From Bispira polyomma (Eukaryota): a stretch of DNA of 64,000 bases. Shown piece by piece: positions 4,062 to 64,000 of the stretch. The translations under genes and the position numbers were made by a program. Every line of letters starts with the position of its first letter. The stretch's first letter is position 1. Location of the stretch: contig OZ287748.1 in assembly GCA_965649765.1 (NCBI GenBank), positions 92,752,001 through 92,816,000 on the forward strand. Direction: 5' to 3'. The notes beneath the pieces are model-generated. The model was not told the DNA's origin, made no database searches, and worked only from the letters and a program-made list of their open reading frames with translations.

Positions 4062-4074
4062 CTACGCGGTACCT

Positions 4075-13099: not shown

Positions 13100-13524
13100 C
13101 AAAGTCATAATTAATATTTAGATCTAAACTTTCATTTCAGTAAATGTCCTGTCTCTACAAGCATTGCAAAGGCTAATAGGTAGTAAAGTGTAAAGCACAC
13201 AGGCATCTATAATAGCCTAAAAATGCACTATTCAGAACCAGATTGACCAGATCTATAATCTAATCTATAATCCGTATTTGTTGGAACTCCAAAATGTGAT
13301 AATGTGGCAAATATTTTTTTAGTAGAAGACATGTGTATTGATCATTGGCTGACTAGTATATCAACACAGAAAAACGATTGATAGACCACTGTAAGTAAGT
13401 GCTTGTTTCAACTTTCTATGTCATGGTATTTTACAGTTTGAATTCGAAAACACTTTCTATTTAGAATCTATTAATACAATGTTATGTTCCTCAATTATTT
13501 TCATGAGGATTTGTTGATGCATCA

Positions 13525-13840
13525 GTATTGGTATAGTTCACTGACTGAAGAAGTTAATGAAATCGACAAACATTTTATGAAGGATGAAATTTCACAAGAT
13601 GTATCTATTTCTCAAGCCAAGATCAACATTATAGTCAAATTGTATGTTAAATATGTTCAGTTGACAATATATAACGATGCAGCCAGATTGTACAGTACAC
13701 TGACTGAAAAAGTTAATGAAATCGACAAACATTTTATGAAGGAAGAAATTTCCTAGGACATATCTATTTCTTATGCAAAGACCAACCTTATAATCAAATT
13801 GTACGTTAAATGTAATCAGTGGACAATATATAATGATGAA
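13525..13840. repeat. 159-bp internal direct repeat (2 copies) in the spacer of every array unit; unit 1 shown
   Basis: CTGACTGAAGAAGTTAATGAAATCGACAAACATTTTATG at 13541 and again, near-identical, at 13700. Confidence 0.9.
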
Positions 13841-13963
13841 CTTTTGCAAGAGATGCAATTTTTGCATCAATATCTTTATAATAAGCAAGGACATCTTATT
13901 CATGGATGAAATTCAAGTATCTTTCCTAAATTCATGTAACTGATTGATTTATGATTAAAGGCA

Positions 13964-14035
13964 CGGGGTATAGCTCAGTGGCAGGGCATTTGAGTGCAGA
14001 TCAGTAGGTCTCTGGTTCAACTCCGGATGCCCCCT
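13964..14035 (+). pseudogene. degenerate tRNA-Cys(GCA), unit 1
   Basis: C1:C72 mismatch, G32, broken anticodon stem (TTTGA/TCAGT). Confidence 0.75.
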
Positions 14036-14096
14036 TTTTTACCATTACCTGAAATATGTATGCAGGAAAATCATAATAAAACAATCCACATTGAAA

Positions 14097-14170
14097 AGGC
14101 TCTGCTGAGATTCGAACTCAGGATCTCCTGTTTACTAGACAGGCACTTTAACCAACTAAGCATCAGAGAC
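14097..14170 (-). pseudogene. degenerate tRNA-Thr(AGT), unit 1
   Basis: 5' end GTCTCTGATGC: acceptor mismatch and loss of U8. Confidence 0.75.
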
Positions 14171-15111
14171 AGATATTTCTCCACTTAAATATTGGATCCC
14201 ACAATTCCCTACTTGACAGTCCTATTAAATATTTGCTCACTATTTCTTAGAGTCATAGTTAATATTTAGATCTAAACTTTCATTTCAATAAATGTTCTGT
14301 CTCTACAAGAATTGCAAAGGCTAATAGGTAGTAAAGTGTAAAGCACACAGGCATCTATAATGGCCTAAAAATGCACTATTCAGAACCAGATTGACCAGAT
14401 CTATAATCTAATCTATAATCCATATTAGTTGGAACTCCAAAATGTGACAATGTAGCAAATAATTTTTAGTAGAAGACATGTGTATTGATCATTGGCTGAC
14501 TAGTATATGAACACAGAAAAACGATTTGATAGACCACTGTAGATAAGTGTTTGTTTCATCTTTCTATGTCATGGTATTTTATAGTTTGAATTCGAAAACA
14601 CTTTCTATTTAGAACCTTTTAATACAATGTTATGCTGCTCAACTATTTTCCTGAGGATTTGTTGATGCATCAGTATTGGTATAGTTCACTGACTGAATAA
14701 GTTAATGAAATCGACAAACATTTTATGAAGGATGAAATTTCACAAGATGTATCTATTTCTTATGCCAGGATCAACATTATAGTCAAATTGTACGTTAAAT
14801 ATGTTCAGTTGACAATATATAATGATGCAGCCAGATTGTACAGTACACTGACTGAAGAAGTTATTGAAATGGACAAACATTTTATATAGGATGAAATTTT
14901 CCAGGACATATCTATTTCTTATGCAAAGACCAACCTTATAATCAAATTGTACATTAAATGAAATCAGTTGACAATATATAATGATGAACTTTTGCAAGGG
15001 ATGCTATTTCTGCATCAATATCTTTACAATAAGCAAGGACATCTTATTCATGGATGAAATTCAAGTATCTTTCCTAAATTGATGTAACTGATTGATGGAC
15101 GATTAAAAGCA

Positions 15112-15183
15112 GGGGGTATAGCTCAGTGGCAGAGCATTTGACTGCAGATCAAGAGGTCTCTGCTTCAACTCCAGATGCCCCCT
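15112..15183 (+). tRNA. tRNA-Cys(GCA), unit 2, G53C B-box lesion (probably inactive)
   Basis: cloverleaf, but T arm reads TCTGC TTCAACT. Confidence 0.55.
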
Positions 15184-15244
15184 TTTGTACCATTACGTGA
15201 AATATGTAAGCATGAAAATCATAATAAAACAACCCACACTGAAT

Positions 15245-15318
15245 AGGCTCTGCTGAGACTCGAACTCAGGATCTCCTGTTTACTAGACAGGCACTTTAAC
15301 CAACTAAGCCACAGAGCC
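15245..15318 (-). tRNA. tRNA-Thr(AGT), unit 2
   Basis: full cloverleaf, T loop TTCGAGT. Confidence 0.88.
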
Positions 15319-17618: not shown

Positions 17619-18561
17619 AGGTATCACTACACTTAAATATTTGATCCCACAATTCCTACTTGACAGTTCCTATTAAATATCTGCTCACTATTTCTCAAAG
17701 TCATAATTAATATTTAGATCTAAACTTTCACTTCAATAAATGTCCTGTCTCTACAAGCATTGCAAAGGCTAATAGGCAGTAAAGTGTAAAGCACACAGGC
17801 ATCTATAATAGCCTAAAAATGCACTATTCATGAACCAGATTGACCGGATCTAAAATCTAATCTATAATCCGTATTAGTTGGAACTCCAAAATGTGACAAT
17901 GTGGCAAATATTTTTTTAGTAGAAGACATGTGTATTGATCATTGGCTGACTAGTATATGAACACAGAAAAACAATTTCATACACCACTGTAGATAGGTGT
18001 TTGCTTCAACTTTCTATGTCATTGTATTTTACAATTTTAATTCGAAAACACTTTCTATTTAGAACCTATTAATACAATGTTATGTTCCTCAATTATTTTC
18101 ATGAGGATTTGTTGATGCATCAGTATTGGTATAGTTCACTAACTGAAGAAGTTAATGAAACCGGTAAACATTTTATGAAGGATGAAATTTCACAAGATGT
18201 ATCTATTTCTCATGCCAAGATCAACATTATAGTCAAATTGTACGTTAAATATGTTCAGTTGACAATATATAATGATGCAGCCAGATTGGACAATACACTG
18301 ACTGAAGAAGTTATTGAAATGGACAAACATTTTATGTAGGATGAAATTTTCCAGGACATATCTATTTCTTATGCAAAGACCAACCTTATAATCAAATTGT
18401 ACATTAAATGAAATCATTTGACAATATATAATGATGAACTTTTGCAAGGGATGCTATTTCCGCATCAATATCTTTACAATAAGCAAGGACATCTTATTCA
18501 TGGATGAAATTCAAGTATCTTTCCTAAATTGATGTAACTGATTGATGGACGATTAAAAGCA

Positions 18562-18633
18562 GGGGGTATAGCTCAGTGGCAGAGCATTTGACTGCAGATC
18601 AAGAGGTCTCTGGTTCAACTCCAGATGCCCCCT
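18562..18633 (+). tRNA. tRNA-Cys(GCA), unit 5
   Basis: major type. Confidence 0.9.
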
Positions 18634-18694
18634 TTTGTACCATTACGTGAAATATGTAAGCATGAAAATCATAATAAAACAACCCACACTGAAT

Positions 18695-18768
18695 AGGCTC
18701 TGCTGAGATTCGAACTCAGGATCTCCTGTTTACTAGACAGGCACTTTAACCAACTAAGCCACAGAGCC
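18695..18768 (-). tRNA. tRNA-Thr(AGT), unit 5
   Basis: major type. Confidence 0.9.
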
Positions 18769-19711
18769 AGGTATCACTACACTTAAATATTTGATCCCAC
18801 AATTCCTACTTGATAGTTCCTATTAAATATCTGCTCACTATTTCTCAAAGTCATAATTAATATTTAGATCTAAACTTTCACTTCAATAAATGTCCTGTCT
18901 CTACAAGCATTGCAAAGGCTAATAGGCAGTAAAGTGTAAAGCACACAGGCATCTATAATAGCCTAAAAATGCACTATTCATGAACCAGATTGACCGGATC
19001 TAAAATCTAATCTATAATCCGTATTAGTTGGAACTCCAAAATGTGACAATGTGGCAAATATTTTTTTAGTAGAAGACATGTGTATTGATCATTGGCTGAC
19101 TAGTATATGAACACAGAAAAACAATTTCATACACCACTGTAGATAGGTGTTTGCTACAACTTTTTATGTCATTGTATTTTACAATTTTAATTCGAAAACA
19201 CTTTCTATTTAGAACCTATTAATACAATGTTATGTTCCTCAATTATTTTCATGAGGATTTGTTGATGCATCTGTATTGGTATAGTTCACTAACTGAAGAA
19301 GTTAATGAAACCGGTAAACATTTTATGAAGGATGAAATTTCACAAGATGTATCTATTTCTCATGCCAAGATCAACATTATAGTCAAATTGTACGTTAAAT
19401 ATGTTCAGTTGACAATATATAATGATGCAGCCAGATTGGACAATACACTGACTGAAGAAGTTATTGAAATGGACAAACATTTTATGTAGGATGAAATTTT
19501 CCAGGACATATCTATTTCTTATGCAAAGACCAACCTTATAATCAAATTGTACATTAAATGAAATCAGTTGACAATATATAATGATAAACTTTTGCAAGGG
19601 ATGCTATTTCCGCATCAATATCTTTACAATAAGCAAGGACATCTTATTCATGGATGAAATTCAAGTATCTTTCCTAAATTGATGTAACTGATTGATGGAC
19701 GATTAAAAGCA

Positions 19712-19918: not shown

Positions 19919-20861
19919 AGGTACCACTACACTTAAATATTTGATCCCACAATTCCTACTTGACAGTTCCTATTAAATATCTGCTCACTATTTCTCAAAG
20001 TCATAATTAATATTTAGATCTAAACTTTCACTTCAATAAATGTCCTGTCTCTACAAGCATTGCAAAGGCTAATAGGCAGTAAAGTGTAAAGCACACAGGC
20101 ATCTATAATAGCCTAAAAATGCACTATTCATGAACCAGATTGACCGGATCTAAAATCTAATCTATAATCCGTATTAGTTGGAACTCCAAAATGTGACAAT
20201 GTGGCAAATATTTTTTTAGTAGAAGACATGTGTATTGATCATTGGCTGACTAGTATATGAACACAGAAAAACAATTTCATACACCACTGTAGATAGGTGT
20301 TTGCTTCAACTTTCTATGTCATTGTATTTTACAATTTTAATTCGAAAACACTTTCTATTTAGAACCTATTAATACAATGTTATGTTCCTCAATTATTTTC
20401 ATGAGGATTTGTTGATGCATCTGTATTGGTATAGTTCACTAACTGAAGAAGTTAATGAAACCGGTAAACATTTTATGAAGGATGAAATTTCACAAGATGT
20501 ATCTATTTCTCATGCCAAGATCAACATTATAGTCAAATTGTACGTTAAATATGTTCAGTTGACAATATATAATGATGCAGCCAGATTGGACAATACACTG
20601 ACTGAAGAAGTTATTGAAATGGACAAACATTTTATGTAGGATGAAATTTTCCAGGACATATCTATTTCTTATGCAAAGACCAACCTTATAATCAAATTGT
20701 ACATTAAATGAAATCATTTGACAATATATAATGATAAACTTTTGCAAGGGATGCTATTTCCGCATCAATATCTTTACAATAAGCAAGGACATCTTATTCA
20801 TGGATGAAATTCAAGTATCTTTCCTAAATTGATGTAACTGATTGATGGACGATTAAAAGCA

Positions 20862-20933
20862 GGGGGTATAGCTCAGTGGCAGAGCATTTGACTGCAGATC
20901 AAGAGGTCTCTGGTTCAACTCCAGATGCCCCCT
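20862..20933 (+). tRNA. tRNA-Cys(GCA), unit 7
   Basis: major type. Confidence 0.9.
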
Positions 20934-20994
20934 TTTGTACCATTACGTGAAATATGTAAGCATGAAAATCATAATAAAACAACCCACACTGAAT

Positions 20995-21068
20995 AGGCTC
21001 TGCTGAGATTCGAACTCAGGATCTCCTGTTTACTAGACAGGCACTTTAACCAACTAAGCCACAGAGCC
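20995..21068 (-). tRNA. tRNA-Thr(AGT), unit 7
   Basis: major type. Confidence 0.9.
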
Positions 21069-22011
21069 AGGTATCACTACACTTAAATATTTGATCCCGC
21101 AATTCCTACTTGATAGTTCCTATTAAATATCTGCTCACTATTTCTCAAAGTCATAATTAATATTTAGATCTAAACTTTCACTTCAATAAATGTCCTGTCT
21201 CTACAAGCATTGCAAAGGCTAATAGGCAGTAAAGTGTAAAGCACACAGGCATCTATAATAGCCTAAAAATGCACTATTCATGAACCAGATTGACCGGATC
21301 TAAAATCTAATCTATAATCCGTATTAGTTGGAACTCCAAAATGTGACAATGTGGCAAATATTTTTTTAGTAGAAGACATGTGTATTGATCATTGGCTGAC
21401 TAGTATATGAACACAGAAAAACAATTTCATACACCACTGTAGATAGGTGTTTGCTACAACTTTCTATGTCATTGTATTTTACAATTTTAATTCGAAAACA
21501 CTTTCTATTTAGAACCTATTAATACAATGTTATGTTCCTCAATTATTTTCATGAGGATTTGTTGATGCATCAGTATTGGTATAGTTCACTAACTGAAGAA
21601 GTTAATGAAACCGGTAAACATTTTATGAAGGATGAAATTTCACAAGATGTATGTATTTCTCATGCCAAGATCAACATTATAGTCAAATTGTACGTTAAAT
21701 ATGTTCAGTTGACAATATATAATGATGCAGCCAGATTGGACAATACACTGACTGAAGAAGTTATTGAAATGGCCAAACATTTTATGTAGGATGAAATTTT
21801 CCAGGACATATCTATTTCTTATGCAAAGACCAACCTTATAATCAAATTGTACATTAAATGAAATCATTTGACAATATATAATGATGAACTTTTGCAAGGG
21901 ATGCTATTTCCGCATCAATATCTTTACAATAAGCAAGGACATCTTATTCATGGATGAAATTCAAGTATCTTTCCTAAATTGATGTAACTGATTGATGGAC
22001 GATTAAAAGCA

Positions 22012-22083
22012 GGGGGTATAGCTCAGTGGCAGAGCATTTGACTGCAGATCAAGAGGTCTCTGGTTCAACTCCAAATGCCCCCT
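22012..22083 (+). tRNA. tRNA-Cys(GCA), unit 8, T-stem mismatch type
   Basis: CCAAA variant. Confidence 0.8.
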
Positions 22084-22144
22084 TTTGTACCATTACGTGA
22101 AATATGTAAGCATGAAAATCATAATAAAACAACCCACACTGAAT

Positions 22145-22218
22145 AGGCTCTGCTGAGATTCGAACTCAGGATCTCCTGTTTACTAGACAGGCACTTTAAC
22201 CAACTAAGCCACAGAGCC
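22145..22218 (-). tRNA. tRNA-Thr(AGT), unit 8
   Basis: major type. Confidence 0.9.
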
Positions 22219-23161
22219 AGGTATCACTACACTTAAATATTTGATCCCACAATTCCTACTTGACAGTTCCTATTAAATATCTGCTCACTATTTCTCAAAG
22301 TCATAATTAATATTTAGATCTAAACTTTCACTTCAATAAATGTCCTGTCTCTACAAGCATTGCAAAGGCTAATAGGCAGTAAAGTGTAAAGCACACAGGC
22401 ATCTATAATAGCCTAAAAATGCACTATTCATGAACCAGATTGACCGGATCTAAAATCTAATCTATAATCCGTATTAGTTGGAACTCCAAAATGTGACAAT
22501 GTGGCAAATATTTTTTTAGTAGAAGACATGTGTATTGATCATTGGCTGACTAGTATATGAACACAGAAAAACAATTTCATACACCACTGTAGATAGATGT
22601 TTGCTACAACTTTCTATGTCATTGTATTTTACAATTTTAATTCGAAAACACTTTCTATTTAGAACCTATTAATACAATGTTATGTTCCTCAATTATTTTC
22701 ATGAGGATTTGTTGATGCATCAGTATTGGTATAGTTCACTAACTGAAGAAGTTAATGAAACCGGTAAACATTTTATGAAGGATGAAATTTCACAAGATGT
22801 ATCTATTTCTCATGCCAAGATCAACATTATAGTCAAATTGTACGTTAAATATGTTCAGTTGACAATATATAATGATGCAGCCAGATTGGACAATACACTG
22901 ACTGAAGAAGTTATTGAAATGGACAAACATTTTATGTAGGATGAAATTTTCCAGGACATATCTATTTCTTATGCAAAGACCAACCTTATAATCAAATTGT
23001 ACATTAAATGAAATCATTTGACAATATATAATGATAAACTTTTGCAAGGGATGCTATTTCCGCATCAATATCTTTACAATAAGCAAGGACATCTTATTCA
23101 TGGATGAAATTCAAGTATCTTTCCTAAATTGATGTAACTGATTGATGGACGATTAAAAGCA

Positions 23162-23233
23162 GGGGGTATAGCTCAGTGGCAGAGCATTTGACTGCAGATC
23201 AAGAGGTCTCTGGTTCAACTCCAAATGCCCCCT
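23162..23233 (+). tRNA. tRNA-Cys(GCA), unit 9, T-stem mismatch type
   Basis: CCAAA variant. Confidence 0.8.
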
Positions 23234-23294
23234 TTTGTACCATTACGTGAAATATGTAAGCATGAAAATCATAATAAAACAACCCACACTGAAT

Positions 23295-23368
23295 AGGCTC
23301 TGCTGAGATTCGAACTCAGGATCTCCTGTTTACTAGACAGGCACTTTAACCAACTAAGCCACAGAGCC
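23295..23368 (-). tRNA. tRNA-Thr(AGT), unit 9
   Basis: major type. Confidence 0.9.
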
Positions 23369-24311
23369 AGGTATCACTACACTTAAATATTTGATCCCAC
23401 AATTCCTACTTGACAGTTCCTATTAACTATCTGCTCACTATTTCTCAAAGTCATAATTAATATTTAGATCTAAACTTTCACTTCAATAAATGTCCTGTCT
23501 CTACAAGCATTGCAAAGGCTAATAGGCAGTAAAGTGTAAAGCACACAGGCATCTATAATAGCCTAAAAATGCACTATTCATGAACCAGATTGACCGGATC
23601 TAAAATCTAATCTATAATCCGTATTAGTTGGAACTCCAAAATGTGACAATGTGGCAAATATTTTTTTAGTAGAAGACATGTGTATTGATCATTGGCTGAC
23701 TAGTATATGAACACAGAAAAACAATTTCATACACCACTGTAGATAGGTGTTTGCTTCAACTTTCTATGTCATTGTATTTTACAATTTTAATTCGAAAACA
23801 CTTTCTATTTAGAACCTATTAATACAATGTTATGTTCCTCAATTATTTTCATGAGGATTTGTTGATGCATCTGTATTGGTATAGTTCACTAACTGAAGAA
23901 GTTAATGAAACCGGTAAACATTTTATGAAGGATGAAATTTCACAAGATGTATCTATTTCTCATGCCAAGATCAACATTATAGTCAAATTGTACGTTAAAT
24001 ATGTTCAGTTGACAATATATAATGATGCAGCCAGATTGGACAATACACTGACTGAAGAAGTTATTGAAATGGACAAACATTTTATGTAGGATGAAATTTT
24101 CCAGGACATATCTATTTCTTATGCAAAGACCAACCTTATAATCAAATTGTACATTAAATGAAATCATTTGACAATATATAATGATGAACTTTTGCAAGGG
24201 ATGCTATTTCCGCATCAATATCTTTACAATAAGCAAGGACATCTTATTCATGGATGAAATTCAAGTATCTTTCCTAAATTGATGTAACTGATTGATGGAC
24301 GATTAAAAGCA

Positions 24312-24383
24312 GGGGGTATAGCTCAGTGGCAGAGCATTTGACTGCAGATCAAGAGGTCTCTGGTTCAACTCCAGATGCCCCCT
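24312..24383 (+). tRNA. tRNA-Cys(GCA), unit 10
   Basis: major type. Confidence 0.9.
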
Positions 24384-24444
24384 TTTGTACCATTACGTGA
24401 AATATGTAAGCATGAAAATCATAATAAAACAACCCACACTGAAT

Positions 24445-24518
24445 AGGCTCTGCTGAGATTCGAACTCAGGATCTCCTGTTTACTAGACAGGCACTTTAAC
24501 CAACTAAGCCACAGAGCC
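24445..24518 (-). tRNA. tRNA-Thr(AGT), unit 10
   Basis: major type. Confidence 0.9.
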
Positions 24519-25461
24519 AGGTATCACTACACTTAAATATTTGATCCCACAATTCCTACTTGATAGTTCCTATTAAATATCTGCTCACTATTTCTCAAAG
24601 TCATAATTAATATTTAGATCTAAACTTTCACTTCAATAAATGTCCTGTCTCTACAAGCATTGCAAAGGCTAATAGGCAGTAAAGTGTAAAGCACACAGGC
24701 ATCTATAATAGCCTAAAAATGCACTATTCATGAACCAGATTGACCGGATCTAAAATCTAATCTATAATCCGTATTAGTTGGAACTCCAAAATGTGACAAT
24801 GTGGCAAATATTTTTTTAGTAGAAGACATGTGTATTGATCATTGGCTGACTAGTATATGAACACAGAAAAACAATTTCATACACCACTGTAGATAGGTGT
24901 TTGCTACAACTTTCTATGTCATTGTATTTTACAATTTTAATTCGAAAACACTTTCTATTTAGAACCTATTAATACAATGTTATGTTCCTCAATTATTTTC
25001 ATGAGGATTTGTTGATGCATCTGTATTGGTATAGTTCACTAACTGAAGAAGTTAATGAAACCGGTAAACATTTTATGAAGGATGAAATTTCACAAGATGT
25101 ATCTATTTCTCATGCCAAGATCAACATTATAGTCAAATTGTACGTTAAATATGTTCAGTTGACAATATATAATGATGCAGCCAGATTGGACAATACACTG
25201 ACTGAAGAAGTTATTGAAATGGACAAACATTTTATGTAGGATGAAATTTTCCAGGACATATCTATTTCTTATGCAAAGACCAACCTTATAATCAAATTGT
25301 ACATTAAATGAAATCATTTGACAATATATAATGATAAACTTTTGCAAGGGATGCTATTTCCGCATCAATATCTTTACAATAAGCAAGGACATCTTATTCA
25401 TGGATGAAATTCAAGTATCTTTCCTAAATTGATGTAACTGATTGATGGACGATTAAAAGCA

Positions 25462-25533
25462 GGGGGTATAGCTCAGTGGCAGAGCATTTGACTGCAGATC
25501 AAGAGGTCTCTGGTTCAACTCCAGATGCCCCCT
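25462..25533 (+). tRNA. tRNA-Cys(GCA), unit 11
   Basis: major type. Confidence 0.9.
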
Positions 25534-25594
25534 TTTGTACCATTACGTGAAATATGTAAGCATGAAAATCATAATAAAACAACCCACACTGAAT

Positions 25595-25668
25595 AGGCTC
25601 TGCTGAGATTCGAACTCAGGATCTCCTGTTTACTAGACAGGCACTTTAACCAACTAAGCCACAGAGCC
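25595..25668 (-). tRNA. tRNA-Thr(AGT), unit 11
   Basis: major type. Confidence 0.9.
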
Positions 25669-26611
25669 AGGTATCACTACACTTAAATATTTGATCCCAC
25701 AATTCCTACTTGATAGTTCCTATTAAATATCTGCTCACTATTTCTCAAAGTCATAATTAATATTTAGATCTAAACTTTCACTTCAATAAATGTCCTGTCT
25801 CTACAAGCATTGCAAAGGCTAATAGGCAGTAAAGTGTAAAGCACACAGGCATCTATAATAGCCTAAAAATGCACTATTCATGAACCAGATTGACCGGATC
25901 TAAAATCTAATCTATAATCCGTATTAGTTGGAACTCCAAAATGTGACAATGTGGCAAATATTTTTTTAGTAGAAGACATGTGTATTGATCATTGGCTGAC
26001 TAGTATATGAACACAGAAAAACAATTTCATACACCACTGTAGATAGGTGTTTGCTACAACTTTCTATGTCATTGTATTTTACAATTTTAATTCGAAAACA
26101 CTTTCTATTTAGAACCTATTAATACAATGTTATGTTCCTCAATTATTTTCATGAGGATTTGTTGATGCATCTGTATTGGTATAGTTCACTAACTGAAGAA
26201 GTTAATGAAACCGGTAAACATTTTATGAAGGATGAAATTTCACAAGATGTATCTATTTCTCATGCCAAGATCAACATTATAGTCAAATTGTACGTTAAAT
26301 ATGTTCAGTTGACAATATATAATGATGCAGCCAGATTGGACAATACACTGACTGAAGAAGTTATTGAAATGGACAAACATTTTATGTAGGATGAAATTTT
26401 CCAGGACATATCTATTTCTTATGCAAAGACCAACCTTATAATCAAATTGTACATTAAATGAAATCATTTGACAATATATAATGATGAACTTTTGCAAGGG
26501 ATGCTATTTCCGCATCAATATCTTTACAATAAGCAAGGACATCTTATTCATGGATGAAATTCAAGTATCTTTCCTAAATTGATGTAACTGATTGATGGAC
26601 GATTAAAAGCA

Positions 26612-26683
26612 GGGGGTATAGCTCAGTGGCAGAGCATTTGACTGCAGATCAAGAGGTCTCTGGTTCAACTCCAAATGCCCCCT
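26612..26683 (+). tRNA. tRNA-Cys(GCA), unit 12, T-stem mismatch type
   Basis: CCAAA variant. Confidence 0.8.
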
Positions 26684-26744
26684 TTTGTACCATTACGTGA
26701 AATATGTAAGCATGAAAATCATAATAAAACAACCCACACTGAAT

Positions 26745-49601: not shown

Positions 49602-49662
49602 TTTGTACCATTACGTGAAATATGTAAGCATGAAAATCATAATAAAACAACCCACACTGAAT

Positions 49663-49700: not shown

Positions 49701-50643
49701 AGGTATCACTACACTTAAATATTTGATCCCACAATTCCTACTTGACAGTTCCTATTAAATATCTGCTCACTATTTCTCAAAGTCATAATTAATATTTAGA
49801 TCTAAACTTTCACTTCAATAAATGTCCTGTCTCTACAAGCATTGCAAAGGCTAATAGGCAGTAAAGTGTAAAGCACACAGGCATCTATAATAGCCTAAAA
49901 ATGCACTATTCATGAACCAGATTGACCGGATCTAAAATCTAATCTATAATCCGTATTAGTTGGAACTCCAAAATGTGACAATGTGGCAAATATTTTTTTA
50001 GTAGAAGACATGTGTATTGATCATTGGCTGACTAGTATATGAACACAGAAAAACAATTTCATACACCACTGTAGATAGGTGTTTGCTTCAACTTTCTATG
50101 TCATTGTATTTTACAATTTTAATTCGAAAACACTTTCTATTTAGAACCTATTAATACAATGTTATGTTCCTCAATTATTTTCATGAGGATTTGTTGATGC
50201 ATCAGTATTGGTATAGTTCACTAACTGAAGAAGTTAATGAAACCGGTAAACATTTTATGAAGGATGAAATTTCACAAGATGTATCTATTTCTCATGCCAA
50301 GATCAACATTATAGTCAAATTGTACGTTAAATATGTTCAGTTGACAATATATAATGATGCAGCCAGATTGGACAATACACTGACTGAAGAAGTTATTGAA
50401 ATGGACAAACATTTTATGTAGGATGAAATTTTCCAGGACATATCTATTTCTTATGCAAAGACCAACCTTATAATCAAATTGTACATTAAATGAAATCATT
50501 TGACAATATATAATGATGAACTTTTGCAAGGGATGCTATTTCCGCATCAATATCTTTACAATAAGCAAGGACATCTTATTCATGGATGAAATTCAAGTAT
50601 CTTTCCTAAATTGATGTAACTGATTGATGGACGATTAAAAGCA

Positions 50644-50715
50644 GGGGGTATAGCTCAGTGGCAGAGCATTTGACTGCAGATCAAGAGGTCTCTGGTTCAA
50701 CTCCAGATGCCCCCT
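50644..50715 (+). tRNA. tRNA-Cys(GCA), unit 33
   Basis: major type. Confidence 0.9.
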
Positions 50716-50776
50716 TTTGTACCATTACGTGAAATATGTAAGCATGAAAATCATAATAAAACAACCCACACTGAAT

Positions 50777-50850
50777 AGGCTCTGCTGAGATTCGAACTCA
50801 GGATCTCCTGTTTACTAGACAGGCACTTTAACCAACTAAGCCACAGAGCC
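50777..50850 (-). tRNA. tRNA-Thr(AGT), unit 33
   Basis: major type. Confidence 0.9.
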
Positions 50851-51793
50851 AGGTATCACTACACTTAAATATTTGATCCCACAATTCCTACTTGATAGTT
50901 CCTATTAAATATCTGCTCACTATTTCTCAAAGTCATAATTAATATTTAGATCTAAACTTTCACTTCAATAAATGTCCTGTCTCTACAAGCATTGCAAAGG
51001 CTAATAGGCAGTAAAGTGTAAAGCACACAGGCATCTATAATAGCCTAAAAATGCACTATTCATGAACCAGATTGACCGGATCTAAAATCTAATCTATAAT
51101 CCGTATTAGTTGGAACTCCAAAATGTGACAATGTGGCAAATATTTTTTTAGTAGAAGACATGTGTATTGATCATTGGCTGACTAGTATATGAACACAGAA
51201 AAACAATTTCATACACCACTGTAGATAGGTGTTTGCTACAACTTTCTATGTCATTGTATTTTACAATTTTAATTCGAAAACACTTTCTATTTAGAACCTA
51301 TTAATACAATGTTATGTTCCTCAATTATTTTCATGAGGATTTGTTGATGCATCTGTATTGGTATAGTTCACTAACTGAAGAAGTTAATGAAACCGGTAAA
51401 CATTTTATGAAGGATGAAATTTCACAAGATGTATCTATTTCTCATGCCAAGATCAACATTATAGTCAAATTGTACGTTAAATATGTTCAGTTGACAATAT
51501 ATAATGATGCAGCCAGATTGGACAATACACTGACTGAAGAAGTTATTGAAATGGACAAACATTTTATGTAGGATGAAATTTTCCAGGACATATCTATTTC
51601 TTATGCAAAGACCAACCTTATAATCAAATTGTACATTAAATGAAATCATTTGACAATATATAATGATGAACTTTTGCAAGGGATGCTATTTCCGCATCAA
51701 TATCTTTACAATAAGCAAGGACATCTTATTCATGGATGAAATTCAAGTATCTTTCCTAAATTGATGTAACTGATTGATGGACGATTAAAAGCA

Positions 51794-51865
51794 GGGGGTA
51801 TAGCTCAGTGGCAGAGCATTTGACTGCAGATCAAGAGGTCTCTGGTTCAACTCCAGATGCCCCCT
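51794..51865 (+). tRNA. tRNA-Cys(GCA), unit 34
   Basis: major type. Confidence 0.9.
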
Positions 51866-51925
51866 TTTGTACCATTACGTGAAATATGTAAGCATGAAAA
51901 TCATAATAAACAACCCACACTGAAT

Positions 51926-51999
51926 AGGCTCTGCTGAGATTCGAACTCAGGATCTCCTGTTTACTAGACAGGCACTTTAACCAACTAAGCCACAGAGCC
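51926..51999 (-). tRNA. tRNA-Thr(AGT), unit 34
   Basis: major type. Confidence 0.9.
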
Positions 52000-52942
52000 A
52001 GGTATCACTACACTTAAATATTTGATCCCACAATTCCTACTTGATAGTTCCTATTAAATATCTGCTCACTATTTCTCAAAGTCATAATTAATATTTAGAT
52101 CTAAACTTTCACTTCAATAAATGTCCTGTCTCTACAAGCATTGCAAAGGCTAATAGGCAGTAAAGTGTAAAGCACACAGGCATCTATAATAGCCTAAAAA
52201 TGCACTATTCATGAACCAGATTGACCGGATCTAAAATCTAATCTATAATCCGTATTAGTTGGAACTCCAAAATGTGACAATGTGGCAAATATTTTTTTAG
52301 TAGAAGACATGTGTATTGATCATTGGCTGACTAGTATATGAACACAGAAAAACAATTTCATACACCACTGTAGATAGGTGTTTGCTACAACTTTCTATGT
52401 CATTGTATTTTACAATTTTAATTCGAAAACACTTTCTATTTAGAACCTATTAATACAATGTTATGTTCCTCAATTATTTTCATGAGGATTTGTTGATGCA
52501 TCTGTATTGGTATAGTTCACTAACTGAAGAAGTTAATGAAACCGGTAAACATTTTATGAAGGATGAAATTTCACAAGATGTATCTATTTCTCATGCCAAG
52601 ATCAACATTATAGTCAAATTGTACGTTAAATATGTTCAGTTGACAATATATAATGATGCAGCCAGATTGGACAATACACTGACTGAAGAAGTTATTGAAA
52701 TGGACAAACATTTTATGTAGGATGAAATTTTCCAGGACATATCTATTTCTTATGCAAAGACCAACCTTATAATCAAATTGTACATTAAATGAAATCATTT
52801 GACAATATATAATGATGAACTTTTGCAAGGGATGCTATTTCCGCATCAATATCTTTACAATAAGCAAGGACATCTTATTCATGGATGAAATTCAAGTATC
52901 TTTCCTAAATTGATGTAACTGATTGATGGACGATTAAAAGCA

Positions 52943-53014
52943 GGGGGTATAGCTCAGTGGCAGAGCATTTGACTGCAGATCAAGAGGTCTCTGGTTCAAC
53001 TCCAAATGCCCCCT
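52943..53014 (+). tRNA. tRNA-Cys(GCA), unit 35, T-stem mismatch type
   Basis: CCAAA variant. Confidence 0.8.
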
Positions 53015-53075
53015 TTTGTACCATTACGTGAAATATGTAAGCATGAAAATCATAATAAAACAACCCACACTGAAT

Positions 53076-53149
53076 AGGCTCTGCTGAGATTCGAACTCAG
53101 GATCTCCTGTTTACTAGACAGGCACTTTAACCAACTAAGCCACAGAGCC
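53076..53149 (-). tRNA. tRNA-Thr(AGT), unit 35
   Basis: major type. Confidence 0.9.
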
Positions 53150-54092
53150 AGGTATCACTACACTTAAATATTTGATCCCACAATTCCTACTTGACAGTTC
53201 CTATTAAATATCTGCTCACTATTTCTCAAAGTCATAATTAATATTTAGATCTAAACTTTCACTTCAATAAATGTCCTGTCTCTACAAGCATTGCAAAGGC
53301 TAATAGGCAGTAAAGTGTAAAGCACACAGGCATCTATAATAGCCTAAAAATGCACTATTCATGAACCAGATTGACCGGATCTAAAATCTAATCTATAATC
53401 CGTATTAGTTGGAACTCCAAAATGTGACAATGTGGCAAATATTTTTTTAGTAGAAGACATGTGTATTGATCATTGGCTGACTAGTATATGAACACAGAAA
53501 AACAATTTCATACACCACTGTAGATAGGTGTTTGCTTCAACTTTCTATGTCATTGTATTTTACAATTTTAATTCGAAAACACTTTCTATTTAGAACCTAT
53601 TAATACAATGTTATGTTCCTCAATTATTTTCATGAGGATTTGTTGATGCATCTGTATTGGTATAGTTCACTAACTGAAGAAGTTAATGAAACCGGTAAAC
53701 ATTTTATGAAGGATGAAATTTCACAAGATGTATCTATTTCTCATGCCAAGATCAACATTATAGTCAAATTGTACGTTAAATATGTTCAGTTGACAATATA
53801 TAATGATGCAGCCAGATTGGACAATACACTGACTGAAGAAGTTATTGAAATGGACAAACATTTTATGTAGGATGAAATTTTCCAGGACATATCTATTTCT
53901 TATGCAAAGACCAACCTTATAATCAAATTGTACATTAAATGAAATCATTTGACAATATATAATGATGAACTTTTGCAAGGGATGCTATTTCCGCATCAAT
54001 ATCTTTACAATAAGCAAGGACATCTTATTCATGGATGAAATTCAAGTATCTTTCCTAAATTGATGTAACTGATTGATGGACGATTAAAAGCA

Positions 54093-54164
54093 GGGGGTAT
54101 AGCTCAGTGGCAGAGCATTTGACTGCAGATCAAGAGGTCTCTGGTTCAACTCCAGATGCCCCCT
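54093..54164 (+). tRNA. tRNA-Cys(GCA), unit 36
   Basis: major type. Confidence 0.9.
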
Positions 54165-54225
54165 TTTGTACCATTACGTGAAATATGTAAGCATGAAAAT
54201 CATAATAAAACAACCCACACTGAAT

Positions 54226-54299
54226 AGGCTCTGCCGAGATTCGAACTCAGGATCTCCTGTTTACTAGACAGGCACTTTAACCAACTAAGCCAAAGAGCC
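54226..54299 (-). tRNA. tRNA-Thr(AGT), unit 36, G7T acceptor mismatch
   Basis: same variant as unit 16. Confidence 0.75.
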
Positions 54300-55242
54300 A
54301 GGTATCACTACACTTAAATATTTGATCCCACAATTCCTACTTGACAGTTCCTATTAAATATCTGCTCACTATTTCTCAAAGTCATAATTAATATTTAGAT
54401 CTAAACTTTCACTTCAATAAATGTCCTGTCTCTACAAGCATTGCAAAGGCTAATAGGCAGTAAAGTGTAAAGCACACAGGCATCTATAATAGCCTAAAAA
54501 TGCACTATTCATGAACCAGATTGACCGGATCTAAAATCTAATCTATAATCCGTATTAGTTGGAACTCCAAAATGTGACAATGTGGCAAATATTTTTTTAG
54601 TAGAAGACATGTGTATTGATCATTGGCTGACTAGTATATGAACACAGAAAAACAATTTCATACACCACTGTAGATAGGTGTTTGCTTCAACTTTCTATGT
54701 CATTGTATTTTACAATTTTAATTCGAAAACACTTTCTATTTAGAACCTATTAATACAATGTTATGTTCCTCAATTATTTTCATGAGGATTTGTTGATGCA
54801 TCTGTATTGGTATAGTTCACTAACTGAAGAAGTTAATGAAACCGGTAAACATTTTATGAAGGATGAAATTTCACAAGATGTATCAATTTCTCATGCCAAG
54901 ATCAACATTATAGTCAAATTGTACGTTAAATATGTTCAGTTGACAATATATAATGATGCAGCCAGATTGGACAATACACTGACTGAAGAAGTTATTGAAA
55001 TGGACAAACATTTTATGTAGGATGAAATTTTCCAGGACATATCTATTTCTTATGCAAAGACCAACCTTATAATCAAATTGTACATTAAATGAAATCATTT
55101 GACAATATATAATGATGAACTTTTGCAAGGGATGCTATTTCCGCATCAATATCTTTACAATAAGCAAGGACATCTTATTCATGGATGAAATTCAAGTATC
55201 TTTCCTAAATTGATGTAACTGATTGATGGACGATTAAAAGCA

Positions 55243-55314
55243 GGGGGTATAGCTCAGTGGCAGAGCATTTGACTGCAGATCAAGAGGTCTCTGGTTCAAC
55301 TCCAGATGCCCCCT
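55243..55314 (+). tRNA. tRNA-Cys(GCA), unit 37
   Basis: major type. Confidence 0.9.
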
Positions 55315-55375
55315 TTTGTACCATTACGTGAAATATGTAAGCATGAAAATCATAATAAAACAACCCACACTGAAT

Positions 55376-55449
55376 AGGCTCTGCCGAGATTCGAACTCAG
55401 GATCTCCTGTTTACTAGACAGGCACTTTAACCAACTAAGCCACAGAGCC
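55376..55449 (-). tRNA. tRNA-Thr(AGT), unit 37, T-stem wobble
   Basis: same variant as unit 17. Confidence 0.87.
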
Positions 55450-56393
55450 AGGTATCACTACACTTAAATATTTGATCCCACAATTCCTACTTGACAGTTC
55501 CTATTAAATATCTGCTCACTATTTCTCAAAGTCATAATTAATATTTAGATCTAAACTTTCACTTCAATAAATGTCCTGTCTCTACAAGCATTGCAAAGGC
55601 TAATAGGCAGTAAAGTGTAAAGCACACAGGCATCTATAATAGCCTAAAAATGCACTATTCATGAACCAGATTGACCGGATCTAAAATCTAATCTATAATC
55701 CGTATTAGTTGGAACTCCAAAATGTGACAATGTGGCAAATATTTTTTTAGTAGAAGACATGTGTATTGATCATTGGCTGACTAGTATATGAACACAGAAA
55801 AACAATTTCATACACCACTGTAGATAGGTGTTTGCTTCAACTTTCTATGTCATTGTATTTTACAATTTTAATTCGAAAACACTTTCTATTTAGAACCTAT
55901 TAATACAATGTTATGTTCCTCAATTATTGTCATGAGGATTTGTTGATGCATCTGTATTGGTATAGTTCACTAACTGAAGAAGTTAATGAAACCGGTAAAC
56001 ATTTTATGAAGGATGAAATTTCACAAGATGTATCTATTTCTCATGCCAAGATCAACATTATAGTCAAATTGTACGTTAAATATGTTCAGTTGACAATATA
56101 TAATGATGCAGCCAGATTGGACAATACACTGACTGAAGAAGTTATTGAAATGGACAAACATTTTATGTAGGATGAAATTTTCCAGGACATATCTATTTCT
56201 TATGCAAAGACCAACCTTATAATCAAATTGTACATTAAATGAAATCATTTGACAATATATAATGATGAACTTTTGCAAGGGATGCTATTTCCGCATCAAT
56301 ATCTTTACAATAAGCAAGGACATCTTATTCATGGATGAAATTCAAGTATCTTTTCTAAATTGATGTAACTGATTGATGGACGATTAAAAGCAT

Positions 56394-56465
56394 GGGGGTA
56401 TAGCTCAGTGGCAGAGCATTTCACTGCAGGTGAAGAGGTCTCTGGTTCAACTCCGGATGCCCTTT
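56394..56465 (+). tRNA. tRNA-Cys(GCA), unit 38, anticodon-stem swap type
   Basis: same variant as unit 18. Confidence 0.7.
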
Positions 56466-56525
56466 TTGTACCATTACGTGAAATATGTAAGCAGGAAAAT
56501 CATAATAAAACAACCCAGACTTAAT

Positions 56526-56599
56526 AGGCTCTGCTGAGATTCGAACTCAGGATCTCCTGTTTACTAGACAGGCACTTTAACCAACTAAGCCACAGAGCC
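56526..56599 (-). tRNA. tRNA-Thr(AGT), unit 38
   Basis: major type. Confidence 0.9.
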
Positions 56600-57541
56600 A
56601 GGTATCACTACACTTAAATATTTGATCCCACAATTCCTACTTGATAGTTCCTATTAAATATCTGCTCACTTTCTCAAAGTCATAATTAATATTTAGATCT
56701 AAACTTTCATTTCAATAAATGTCCTGTCTCTACAAGCATTGCAAAGGCTAATAGGCAGTAAAGTGTAAAGCACACAGGCATCTATAATAGCCTAAAAATG
56801 CACTATTCATGAACCAGATTGACCGGATCTAAAATCTAATCTATAATCCGTATTAGTTGGAACTCTAAAATGTGACAATGTGGCAAATAATTTTTTGGTA
56901 GAAGACATGTGTATTGATCATTGGCTGACTAGTATATGAACACAGAAAAACAATTTCATAGACCACTGTAGATAGGTGTTTGCTTCAACTTTCTATGTCA
57001 TGGTATTTTACAATTTCAATTCGAAAACACTTTCTATTTAGAACCTATTAATACAATGTTATGTTCCTCAATTATTTTCATGAGGATTTGTTGATGCATC
57101 TGTATTGGTATAGTTCACTGACTGAAGAAGTTATTGAAAACGGTAAACATTTTATGAAGGATGAAATTTCACAAGATGTATCTATTTCTCAAGCCAAGAT
57201 CAACATTATAGTCAAATTGTACGTTAAATATGTTTAATTGACAATATATAATGATGCAGCCAGATTGTACAGTACACTGACTGAAGAAGTTATTGAAATG
57301 GACAAACATTTTATGTAGGATGAAATTTTCCAAGACATATCTATTTCTTATGCAAAGACCAACCTTATAATCAAATTGTACATTAAATGAAATCAGTTGA
57401 CAATATATAATGATGAACTTTTGCAAGGGATGCTATTTCTGCATCAATATCTTTACAATAAGCAAGGACATCTTATTCATGGATGAAATTCAAGTATCTT
57501 TCCTAAATTGATGTAACTGATTGATGGACGATTAAAAGCAG

Positions 57542-61116: not shown

Positions 61117-61190
61117 AGGCTCTGCTGAGATTCGAACTCAGGATCTCCTGTTTACTAGACAGGCACTTTAACCAACTAAGCCACAGAGCC
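61117..61190 (-). tRNA. tRNA-Thr(AGT), unit 42
   Basis: major type. Confidence 0.9.
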
Positions 61191-62129
61191 AGGTATCGCT
61201 ACAATTAATATTTGATCCCACAATTCCTACTTGATAATTCCTATTAAATATCTGCTCACTTTCTCAAAGTCATAATTAATATTTAGATCTAAACTTTCAT
61301 TTCAATAAATGTCCTGTCTCTACAAGCATTGCAAAGGCTAATAGGCAGTAAAGTGTAAAGCACACAGGCATCTATCATAGCCTTTAAATGCGCTATTTAG
61401 AACAAGATTGACCGGATCTATAATCTAATCTATAATCCGTATTAGTTGGAACTCCAAAATGTGACAATGTGGCAAATATTGTTTTAGTAGAAGACATGTG
61501 TATTGATCATTGGCTGACTAGTATATGAACACAGAAAAACGATTTCATAGACCACTGTAGATAGGTGTTTGCTTCAACTATCTATGTCATTGTATTTTAC
61601 AATTTTAATTCGAAAACACTTTCTATTTAGAACCTATTAATACAATGTTATGTTCCTCAGTTATTTTCATCAGGATTTGTTGATGCATCTGTATTGGTAT
61701 AGTTCACTGACTGAAGAAGTTAATGAAACCGGTAAACATTTTATGAAGGATGAAATTTCACAAGATGTATGTATTTCTCATGCCAAGATCAACATTATAG
61801 TCAAATTGTACGTTAAATATGTTCAGTTGACAATATATAATGATGCAGCCAGATTGTACAACACACTGACTGAAGAAGTTATTGAAATGGACAAACATTT
61901 TATGTAGGATGAAATTTTCCAGGACATATCTATTTTTTATGCAAAGACCAACCTTATAATCAAATTGTACATTAAATGAAATCAATTGACAATATATAAT
62001 GATGAACTTTTGCAAGGGATGCTATTTCCGCATCAATATCTTTACAATAAGCAAGGACATCTTATTCATGGATGAAATTCAAGTATCTTTCCTAAATTGA
62101 TGTAACTGATTGATGGACGATTAAAAGCA

Positions 62130-62201
62130 GGGGGTATAGCTCAGTGGCAGAGCATTTCACTGCAGGTGAAGAGGTCTCTGGTTCAACTCCAGATGCCCTT
62201 T
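62130..62201 (+). tRNA. tRNA-Cys(GCA), unit 43, anticodon-stem swap type
   Basis: TTTCA/TGAAG with CCAGA TGCCCTT. Confidence 0.7.
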
Positions 62202-62261
62202 TTGTACCATTACGTGAAATATGTAAGCAGGAAAATCATAATAAAACAACCCACACTGAAT

Positions 62262-62335
62262 AGGCTCTGCTGAGATTCGAACTCAGGATCTCCTGTTTAC
62301 TAGACAGGTACTTTAACCAACTAAGCCACAGAGCC
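62262..62335 (-). tRNA. tRNA-Thr(AGT), unit 43, G26A variant
   Basis: plus strand reads ACAGGTACTTT. Confidence 0.85.
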
Positions 62336-63279
62336 AGGTAGCACTACACTTAAATATTTGATCCCACAATTCCTACTTGATAGTTCCTATTAAATATCTG
62401 CTCACTATTTCTCAAAGTCATAATTAATATTTAGATCTAAACTTTCATTTCAATAAATGTCCTGTCTCTACAAGCATTGCAAAGGCTAATAGGCAGTAAA
62501 GTGTAAAGCACACAGGCATCAAAAAAAACCTAAAAATGCACTATTCATGAACCAGATTGACCGGATCTAAAATCTAATCTATAATCCGTATTAGTTGGAA
62601 GTCTAAAATGTGACAATGTGGCAAATAATTTTTTGGTAGAAGACATGTGTATTGATCATTGGCTGACTAGTATATGAACACAGAAAAACGATTTGATAGA
62701 CCACTGTAGATAAGTGTTTCTTTCAACTTTCTATGTTTTAGTATTATACAGTTTTAATTCGAAAACACTTTCTATTTAGAACCTATTAATACAATGTTAT
62801 GTTCCTCAATTATTTTCATGAGGATTGGTTGATGCATCTGTATTGGTATAGTTCACTGACTGAAGAAGTTAATGAAATCGACAAACATTTTATGAAGGAT
62901 GAAATTTCACAGGATGTATCTATTTCTTATGCCAAGATCAACATTATAATCAAATTGTATGTTAAATATGTTCAGTTGACAATCTATAATGATGCAGCCA
63001 GATTGTACAGTACACTGACTGAAGAAGTTATTGAAATGGACAAACATTTTATATAGGATGAAATTTTCCAGGACATATCTATTTCTTATGCAAAGACCAA
63101 CCTTATAATCAAATTGTACATTAAATGAAATCAGTTGACAATATATAATGATAAACTTTTGCAAGGGATGCTATTTCTGCATCAATATCTTTACAATAAG
63201 CAAGGACATCTTATTCATGGATGAAATTCAAGTATCTTTCCTAAATTGATGTAACTGATTGATGGACGATTAAAAGCAG

Positions 63280-63351
63280 GGGGGTATAGCTCAGTGGCAG
63301 AGCATTTCACTGCAGGTGAAGAGGTCTCTGGTTCAACTCCGGATGCCCCTT
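63280..63351 (+). tRNA. tRNA-Cys(GCA), unit 44, anticodon-stem swap type
   Basis: same variant as unit 19. Confidence 0.75.
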
Positions 63352-63411
63352 TTATACCATTACGTGAAATATGTAAGCAGGAAAATCATAATAAAACAAC
63401 CCACACTGAAT

Positions 63412-63485
63412 AGGCTCTGCTGAGATTCGAACTCAGGATCTCCTGTTTACTAGACAGGCACTTTAACCAACTAAGCCACAGAGCC
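63412..63485 (-). tRNA. tRNA-Thr(AGT), unit 44
   Basis: major type. Confidence 0.9.
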
Positions 63486-64000
63486 AGGTATCGCTACAAT
63501 TAATATTTGATCCCACAATTCCTACTTGATAATTCCTATTAAATATCTGCTCACTTTCTCAAAGTCATAATTAATATTTAGATCTAAACTTTCATTTCAA
63601 TAAATGTCCTGTCTCTACAAGCATTGCAAAGGCTAATAGGCAGTAAAGTGTAAAGCACACAGGCATCTATCATAGCCTTTAAATGCGCTATTTAGAACAA
63701 GATTGACCAGATCTATAATCTAATCTATAATCCGTATTAGTTGGAACTCCAAAATGTGACAATGTGGCAAATATTGTTTTAGTAGAAGACATGTGTATTG
63801 ATCATTGGCTGACTAGTATATGAACACAGAAAAACGATTTCATAGACCACTGTAGATAGGTGTTTGCTTCAACTATCTATGTCATTGTATTTTACAATTT
63901 TAATTCGAAAACACTTTCTATTTAGAACCTATTAATACAATGTTATGTTCCTCAGTTATTTTCATCAGGATTTGTTGATGCATCTGTATTGGTATAGTTC

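What the first reader, a model, noticed from the sequence alone, without database searches (positions are those of the whole stretch)
13100..64000. >50-kb macrosatellite built from a convergent tRNA-Cys(GCA)/tRNA-Thr(AGT) gene pair (44 pairs, open-ended)
Seen: a ~1150-bp unit repeated head-to-tail at least 44 times. Each unit has a foldable Cys-GCA gene on + and a Thr-AGT gene on -. By my count 21 Cys copies are the fully paired major type and 41 Thr copies are full length. Known: tandem tDNA arrays occur in Xenopus, zebrafish, Entamoeba and human 1q23. I do not know of a described Cys/Thr two-gene array, but I cannot exclude one. Inference: it could be a dosage amplifier (oocyte stockpiling, or demand from Thr- and Cys-rich secreted proteins such as mucins), a TFIIIC-dense boundary domain next to the LIM gene, or a tRNA-containing satellite amplified without selection.
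Basis: partly seen in the sequence, partly recalled or inferred. Interest (0 to 1): 0.8.

Follow-up and report, generated by a model that had tools for sequence, protein, structure and literature searches.

The report
Tandem Cys/Thr tRNA gene-pair array
Two ordinary tRNA genes that face each other were copied head-to-tail about 47 times in an invertebrate (probably annelid) genome; the array is real, but every one of nine tRNA types I probed in this genome has such an array, and this arrangement is already known from cnidarians, frogs, fish, plants and human.

Summary
Confirmed, with corrections. The window holds 44 units of about 1150 bp, each with tRNA-Cys(GCA) on + and tRNA-Thr(AGT) on -; 21 Cys copies are the fully paired type and 41 Thr copies are full length. 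The array is not open-ended: it stops 4.9 kb past the window (55.8 kb, 47 units plus a ragged tail). Only 26 of 46 aligned units are distinct: two very recent exact duplications (13 and 7 units) have chimeric junctions inside 100 bp or less of identity, which points to unequal crossing over, not mis-assembly. Edges are decayed. Per-copy variation does not avoid the genes; the homogenised core lineage shows only weak constraint (1/34 versus 16/96 changes, p=0.03). All nine tRNA types probed show a few dispersed genes plus arrays of 10 to about 128 copies, two of them also convergent pairs, so a Cys/Thr- or LIM-specific purpose is unsupported. The scan noted sister arrays on other DNA of this genome. 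Closest known: Hydractinia tRNA arrays. New member of a known kind; interest 0.25.

The parts
13104..64000 (.). Tandem array of ~1150-bp units, 44 in the window; continues 4.9 kb past the window end and stops at extended coordinate 68,871
13104..14250 (.). Decayed left-edge unit: 85 substitutions from the core unit, both tRNA genes with broken pairs (Rfam 43.6 and 54.4 bits)
17700..18849 (.). Example core unit (unit 5): ~860 bp AT-rich spacer, Cys gene, 61-bp intergenic stretch, Thr gene, Thr leader
18137..18436 (.). Internal 159-bp duplication of the spacer (1.9 copies, ~83% alike); non-coding by my tests
18562..18633 (+). tRNA-Cys(GCA), major type, 72 nt, intact A and B boxes, U73; folds as a cloverleaf
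   Evidence: same sequence folded
18633..18636 (+). Single T4 run after Cys, which includes the discriminator base; likely Pol III terminator (inferred)
18665..18679 (-). Two T4 runs on the minus strand downstream of Thr; likely Pol III terminators (inferred)
18695..18768 (-). tRNA-Thr(AGT), major type, 74 nt, intact A and B boxes; folds as a cloverleaf
   Evidence: same sequence folded
20590..49108 (.). Exact 13-unit block duplication: 20590-34201 equals 35497-49108 (13,612 bp without a difference, offset 14,907)
35497..35575 (.). Crossover interval of the 13-unit duplication: chimeric unit 20, left part like unit 40, right part like unit 7
40996..57119 (.). Exact 7-unit tandem duplication: 40996-49108 equals 49007-57119 (8,113 bp, offset 8,011)
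49007..49108 (.). Crossover interval of the 7-unit duplication: chimeric unit 32, left part like unit 19, right part like unit 12
26745..26782 (-). Thr pseudogene with a 36-bp internal deletion (anticodon arm lost); one event, copied to 41652-41689 and 49663-49700
34624..34695 (+). Cys variant with G30C, A38G, C40G in the anticodon arm and a G1-U acceptor pair; 9 such copies, at 33476 and beyond; predicted fold closes the anticodon loop
12272..13094 (.). Left flank: unrelated 178-bp tandem repeat abutting the array
1981..6212 (+). Neighbour, not part of the array: last four coding exons of an FHL2/limpet-type LIM gene; AATAAA at 11047 and 11066 suggests it ends ~2 kb before the array

Best explanation
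An ordinary tandem tDNA array kept by recombination, one of many in this genome. A convergent Cys/Thr gene pair with about 940 bp of flank was duplicated head-to-tail (inferred). Unequal crossing over and gene conversion between misaligned units expand, contract and homogenise the middle, while the edges escape and decay (shown). The array has existed long enough for edges to diverge about 7% from the core, and gained 20 units very recently (shown). The majority copies keep A box, B box, cloverleaf and T4 terminator, so they can be transcribed by TFIIIC/Pol III as two independent, converging units (inferred). I commit to: the array adds bulk tRNA-Cys and tRNA-Thr(IGU) in some cells, selection acts weakly on the array as a whole and not on single copies, and copy number and the Cys/Thr pairing are accidents of which stretch got amplified.
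For: Unit order reduces to 27 ancestral units plus two block duplications with chimeric junction units. 1029 of 3741 site pairs fail the four-gamete test. Edge units differ from the core at 67-85 sites, most core units at 0-7. On the core lineage 1 of 34 derived changes falls in a gene (expected 4.4, p=0.057), and that one turns a U-G wobble into U-A; edge-private changes fall in genes 16 of 96 times; Fisher p=0.031. Same architecture for all seven other types probed and three more arrays in the Rfam scan. The Gly/Asp pair shows the likely origin: one convergent pair on C5 and the same pair arrayed on C9. The array holds 43 of 49 genome hits for the Thr(AGT) probe and 38 of 39 for this Cys type.
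Against: No expression or chromatin data. Variation among copies does not avoid the genes (11 of 101 changes in units 3-45, expected 12.8), and 23 of 44 Cys copies carry structural defects. The relative-rate signal rests on small counts and on one of several comparisons I made. Dispersed Thr and Cys genes exist and could supply all tRNA.
Confidence: 0.55

Rival explanations
1. Silent tRNA-containing satellite: same origin and turnover, but the copies are methylated and never contribute; the dispersed genes supply all Cys and Thr tRNA.
For: Per-copy changes hit genes as often as spacer. A T-stem mismatch (11 copies), a dead Thr (3 copies) and a loop-closing Cys variant (9 copies) were all re-amplified. 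Sister arrays carry many CpG transitions, and CpG o/e here is 0.30 against 0.35-0.67 in the flanks.
Against: The core lineage gathered 33 spacer changes and only one harmless gene change. After about 7% edge divergence the majority Thr and Cys are still intact at 68-70 Rfam bits. CpG number is the same in the reconstructed ancestor and the core, 9 and 9.
Confidence: 0.24
2. Stage-specific (oocyte-type) tier: arrays encode slightly different isodecoders that are switched on together in oocytes or other high-output cells, with dispersed genes as the somatic set, as in Xenopus.
For: Every type probed has dispersed genes plus an array, and array copies often differ from dispersed ones (Phe, His, Asp on C9; Thr and Cys 95-97% alike). 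The largest array found is initiator Met. Precedent: PMC1635290.
Against: No expression data. Array-specific variants also arise by homogenisation alone. Asn, Trp and initiator Met arrays match the dispersed genes over the probe.
Confidence: 0.1
3. Demand-tuned amplifier for Thr- and Cys-rich secreted proteins such as mucins, like the Arabidopsis SYY cluster.
For: Precedent PMC12308677. The array holds most Thr(AGT) genes. Earlier unchecked notes report giant Pro/Thr- and Cys-rich mucins in this genome.
Against: His/Asn, Gly/Asp, Phe, Trp and initiator Met are amplified alike. Twenty of the 47 units are a very recent gain. Half of the Cys copies are impaired.
Confidence: 0.05
4. TFIIIC-dense chromatin boundary that shields the LIM gene from the transposon-rich region on the other side.
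For: A gene lies to the left; to the right I found Harbinger, LTR and LINE remnants among the long ORFs scanned. About 95 B boxes in 56 kb. Precedent suggested for human 1q23.3 (PMC4041453).
Against: No CTCF-like core motif in the unit by a crude scan. Many sister arrays lie elsewhere. One or two tDNAs suffice as barriers in yeast (own knowledge), so 47 units are not explained.
Confidence: 0.04
5. Assembly inflation: the exact 13- and 7-unit duplications are artefacts and the true array has about 27 units.
For: 13.6 kb and 8.1 kb without a single difference, close to long-read length.
Against: Both junctions are new chimeric units that switch template within at most 78 and 102 bp of identity; overlap-based assemblers do not join on so little (own knowledge). 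Even 27 units would leave the array real.
Confidence: 0.05

Closest known systems
Hydractinia and Nematostella tRNA tandem arrays (PMC11067881)
   Same: [quoted passage not shown]
   Different: Different phylum. Here dispersed genes coexist with the arrays. The passage read does not describe convergent two-gene units.
Heterogeneous tDNA clusters of zebrafish, Xenopus and Nematostella (PMC2888827)
   Same: Clusters of 50 or more genes with alternating isotypes; an Arg(TCT)/Thr(AGT or TGT) cluster is figured.
   Different: In Danio and Xenopus nearly all neighbouring pairs are parallel; here the pair is convergent (tail-to-tail).
Human 1q23.3 tDNA VNTR (PMC4041453)
   Same: Multi-gene unit, tens of copies (9-43 per allele), recombination-driven instability.
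   Different: Human unit is 7.3 kb, GC-rich and binds CTCF; this one is 1.15 kb, 33% GC, with no CTCF-like core found.
Xenopus laevis 3.18-kb oocyte-type tRNA repeat (cited in PMC1635290)
   Same: Tandem multi-tRNA unit alongside dispersed genes.
   Different: Eight genes per unit and shown oocyte-specific expression; here two genes and no expression data.
Arabidopsis SYY tRNA-Ser/Tyr cluster (PMC12308677)
   Same: Two-isotype tandem tDNA with an expanded core.
   Different: Shown silent in most tissues and active in root cap, with a deletion phenotype; it is a special cluster, whereas here every type probed is arrayed.
Entamoeba tRNA-STR arrays (cited in PMC11067881 and PMC2888827)
   Same: tRNA genes in long tandem arrays, some with several isotypes per unit (own knowledge).
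   Different: Entamoeba spacers are short tandem repeats and the arrays hold essentially all tRNA genes (own knowledge); here the spacer is complex AT-rich DNA and dispersed genes remain.

Membership tests
Eukaryotic cytosolic tRNA-Cys(GCA) and tRNA-Thr(AGT) genes (Rfam RF00005) | Cloverleaf with correct anticodon, above the Rfam cut-off | tested here: met
   67.9 and 69.8 bits vs 29; folds; met by 21 of 44 Cys copies without defect and by most Thr copies
Eukaryotic cytosolic tRNA-Cys(GCA) and tRNA-Thr(AGT) genes (Rfam RF00005) | Internal A and B boxes and a downstream run of at least four T | tested here: met
   Sequence; T4 runs
Eukaryotic cytosolic tRNA-Cys(GCA) and tRNA-Thr(AGT) genes (Rfam RF00005) | Transcribed by Pol III and matured | not testable with these tools
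Tandem tDNA array (Hydractinia type) | Tens of evenly spaced, near-identical gene copies | tested here: met
   47 units, period 1114-1152 bp
Tandem tDNA array (Hydractinia type) | Spacers of hundreds to thousands of bases, homogenised with the genes | tested here: met
   Most core units within 0-7 substitutions of the consensus over 1150 bp
Tandem tDNA array (Hydractinia type) | Arrays for all 20 amino acids in the genome | tested here: inconclusive
   9 of 9 types probed are arrayed; the rest were not probed
Concerted evolution by unequal crossing over and conversion | Homogeneous core, diverged edges, block duplications, mosaic units | tested here: met
VNTR macrosatellite (1q23.3 type) | Copy number varies between alleles and individuals | not testable with these tools
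   One assembly only; very recent duplications make it likely
VNTR macrosatellite (1q23.3 type) | Conserved CTCF site in the unit | tested here: inconclusive
   No hit with two crude core-motif patterns; no proper matrix scan
Oocyte-type tDNA (Xenopus) | Expression restricted to oocytes | not testable with these tools
   No expression data
Entamoeba tRNA-STR arrays | Spacers made of short tandem repeats | tested here: not met
   TRF finds only a 159-bp duplication in the spacer
tRNA-derived SINE | tRNA-like head plus unrelated body, dispersed in many copies | tested here: not met
   Complete genes with intact 3' ends, in tandem; only one dispersed copy that carries a long piece of spacer with a gene, on C4

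The most novel reading that the evidence does not exclude
This probable annelid has a genome-wide two-tier tRNA gene system: a few dispersed housekeeping genes for each type, plus one or more tandem arrays with their own sequence variants that are switched on together in oocytes or other high-output cells. It would extend the Xenopus oocyte/somatic split to a lophotrochozoan and to most tRNA types, and the array-specific variants would make it testable by tRNA-seq.
Probability: 0.12. Interest if true: 0.55.

Novelty: new member of a known kind. Interest (0 to 1): 0.25.

Why it matters
On its own the array is ordinary. Two things have some value. [quoted passage not shown] Second, it is a caution: about 90% of Thr(AGT) gene copies here sit in one unstable block that gained 20 units recently, so tRNA gene copy number is a poor proxy for tRNA supply or codon demand in such genomes. 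The array is also a clean, fully assembled record of unequal crossing over with mappable junctions.

Tried and rejected
So expression, read depth, the organism's name and the origin of the spacer are untested. Probes for the other tRNA types were typed from my knowledge of conserved anticodon arms; counts are lower bounds. Coding spacer: an 88-codon stop-free stretch is matched by 11-18% of simulations; an apparent synonymous excess in a minus-strand frame (16 of 40) also appears in frames with stops and has no third-position bias; rejected. Compensatory G30C/C40G as proof of selection: rejected, because the 3' arm is the exact reverse complement of the 5' arm, as template switching gives (PMC8794818), and the fold closes the loop. 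CpG loss on the core lineage: 3 losses, 3 gains; no signal. Microhomology at the Thr deletion: not clean. The LIM gene was scanned exon by exon; the joined protein was not searched, and the costly protein searches were not used. Paper searches for a Cys/Thr array or annelid tRNA arrays found none.
Full report
Observation. The array is there as described. ARAGORN tRNA-Cys(GCA) genes on + and 41 tRNA-Thr(AGT) genes on -, about 1150 bp apart. The two genes face each other across 61 bp. The first unit begins at 13104. The major types score 67.9 and 69.8 Rfam bits and fold as cloverleaves. Cys is followed by one T4 run that includes its discriminator base, Thr by two T4 runs.

Extent. The window is G000:C1:92,752,001-92,816,000 in a 1.035-Gb assembly. 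The array ends 4.9 kb past the window, at extended coordinate 68,871: three more whole units, then four short rearranged ones. A broken Harbinger-type transposase piece follows, and no tRNA gene occurs in the next 195 kb. So the array is 55.8 kb with 47 whole units, about 49 full-length Cys and 46 full-length Thr genes. On the left lie a 178-bp tandem repeat and the last exons of an FHL2/limpet-type LIM gene, scanned exon by exon without joining. Earlier unchecked notes call the animal a marine annelid; I did not test this.

History inside the array. Only 26 of 46 aligned units are distinct. The order of unit types shows an exact 13-unit duplication (13,612 bp without a difference) and an exact 7-unit duplication (8,113 bp). 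Each has a chimeric junction unit: unit 20 switches from a unit-40-like to a unit-7-like sequence within 78 bp, unit 32 from unit-19-like to unit-12-like within 102 bp. That is the mark of unequal crossing over; an assembler would need far longer overlaps (inference). Removing both leaves 27 units. With an assumed rate of 1e-8 per site per generation the larger duplication is younger than about 11,000 generations. Units are mosaics: 1029 of 3741 site pairs fail the four-gamete test. Edge units differ from the core at 67-85 sites, most core units at 0-7. This is concerted evolution with decaying edges.

Selection. Variation among copies does not avoid the genes: 11 of 101 changes in units 3-45, 12.8 expected. 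Defective copies were re-amplified: 11 Cys with a T-stem mismatch, 9 with an altered anticodon arm and weaker acceptor stem, 3 Thr with a 36-bp deletion. Over the longer term there is a weak signal. Using both edges as outgroups, the core lineage gained 34 changes, 1 in a gene (4.4 expected, p=0.057), and that one improves a stem pair; edge-private changes hit genes 16 times in 96 (Fisher p=0.031). Counts are small and I made several comparisons, so this is suggestive only.

Genome context, the decisive evidence. The array holds 43 of 49 hits for the Thr(AGT) probe and 38 of 39 for this Cys type; at least 14 other Cys-like loci and 6 dispersed Thr(AGT) genes exist. But every other type I probed has the same layout of a few dispersed genes plus arrays: Asn 23 and His 24 interleaved on C3, Asp 109 hits mostly in three arrays on C7 and C9, Gly(GCC) 17 on C9, Phe 34 on C7, Trp 10 on C2, initiator Met about 128 on C4, and further arrays in the Rfam scan. 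These are lower bounds from probes typed from my own knowledge. His/Asn and Gly/Asp are also convergent pairs, and the Gly/Asp pair survives as a single pair on C5 with nearly the same spacing, which shows how such arrays start. Array sizes do not follow amino-acid demand. Earlier notes list Asp, His/Asn, Lys, Val and Phe/Arg arrays on other DNA of this genome.

How it most likely works. Shown: tandem amplification, unequal crossing over, conversion, edge decay, intact promoters and terminators in the majority copies. Inferred: the two genes are separate Pol III units; the array adds tRNA-Cys and tRNA-Thr(IGU) in at least some cells; selection acts on the block, not on each copy; the pairing and the number are accidental (0.55). 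Rivals: silent satellite (0.24), oocyte-type tier (0.10), demand-tuned amplifier (0.05), assembly inflation (0.05), boundary (0.04).

Comparison with what is known. Hydractinia has evenly spaced tandem arrays of tRNA genes for all 20 amino acids with homogenised spacers, and Nematostella has such arrays too (PMC11067881). Large clusters of alternating isotypes are described for zebrafish, Xenopus and Nematostella (PMC2888827). Human 1q23.3 (PMC4041453), the Xenopus 3.18-kb repeat (PMC1635290) and the Arabidopsis SYY cluster (PMC12308677) are further cases. It works like these and meets the structural tests for a tandem tDNA array; expression and allelic variation could not be tested. I found no paper on a Cys/Thr array or on annelid tRNA arrays in the held library, which lacks most subscription journals.

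Limits. I left the reads tools unused and sent no array letters to any search tool after that; the earlier searches preceded it.

Verdict. Real, ordinary in kind, and not special within its genome. New member of a known kind; interest 0.25. The genome-wide pattern is worth more than this single locus.

Noticed in passing
G000:C4:54,387,118-54,489,048: Initiator tRNA-Met array of about 128 copies, 479-bp period with a 5.9-kb period at one end; many CpG transitions in the D arm. Largest tRNA array seen.
   Followed up: no
G000:C9:8.19-8.29 Mb and G000:C5:32,137,648-32,137,799: Convergent Gly(GCC)/Asp(GTC) pair arrayed on C9 and single-copy on C5; the arrayed Asp has a paired G-C to A-T change in the anticodon stem at a CpG.
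   Followed up: partly
G000:C3:12.295-12.43 Mb: Convergent His/Asn array (935-bp period) followed within 40 kb by an array of 82-nt Leu/Ser-type tRNA genes.
   Followed up: partly
G000:C4:90,870,535-90,870,886: Dispersed copy of about 350 bp of the unit (260 bp of spacer plus the Cys gene), 91% alike: an orphon or the source locus. Could not be fetched.
   Followed up: no
G000:C1:61.45-61.47 Mb and G000:C2:27,076,493-27,077,276: Two small clusters of other Cys-like genes (7 and 4 hits, 85-96% alike), with at least two differences in the anticodon arm region.
   Followed up: no
window:33476-33547, 34624-34695 and seven more Cys copies: Three linked changes make the 3' anticodon arm the exact reverse complement of the 5' arm, as a template-switch mutation would; an apparent compensatory change that probably harms the tRNA.
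   Followed up: partly
L001:2858-2931: Right-edge Thr copy with its anticodon mutated to GGT.
   Followed up: no
window:4071-4437: 86-bp tandem copies of a splice acceptor and exon start of the LIM gene; earlier notes call such repeats 'mirages' and report them as common in this genome.
   Followed up: no
window:1104-1387: 28-bp minisatellite, 10 copies, in an intron of the LIM gene; the unit holds a B-box-like word, two copies matching the full consensus.
   Followed up: no
window:11440-11500: Short tRNA-like stretch with A-box-like and B-box-like words, probably a SINE head, seen by eye; not called by Rfam or ARAGORN.
   Followed up: no
L001:4870-5860; L011, L012, L018: Right flank: broken Harbinger-type transposase directly after the array, then LINE and LTR-retrotransposon remnants and minisatellites.
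   Followed up: partly
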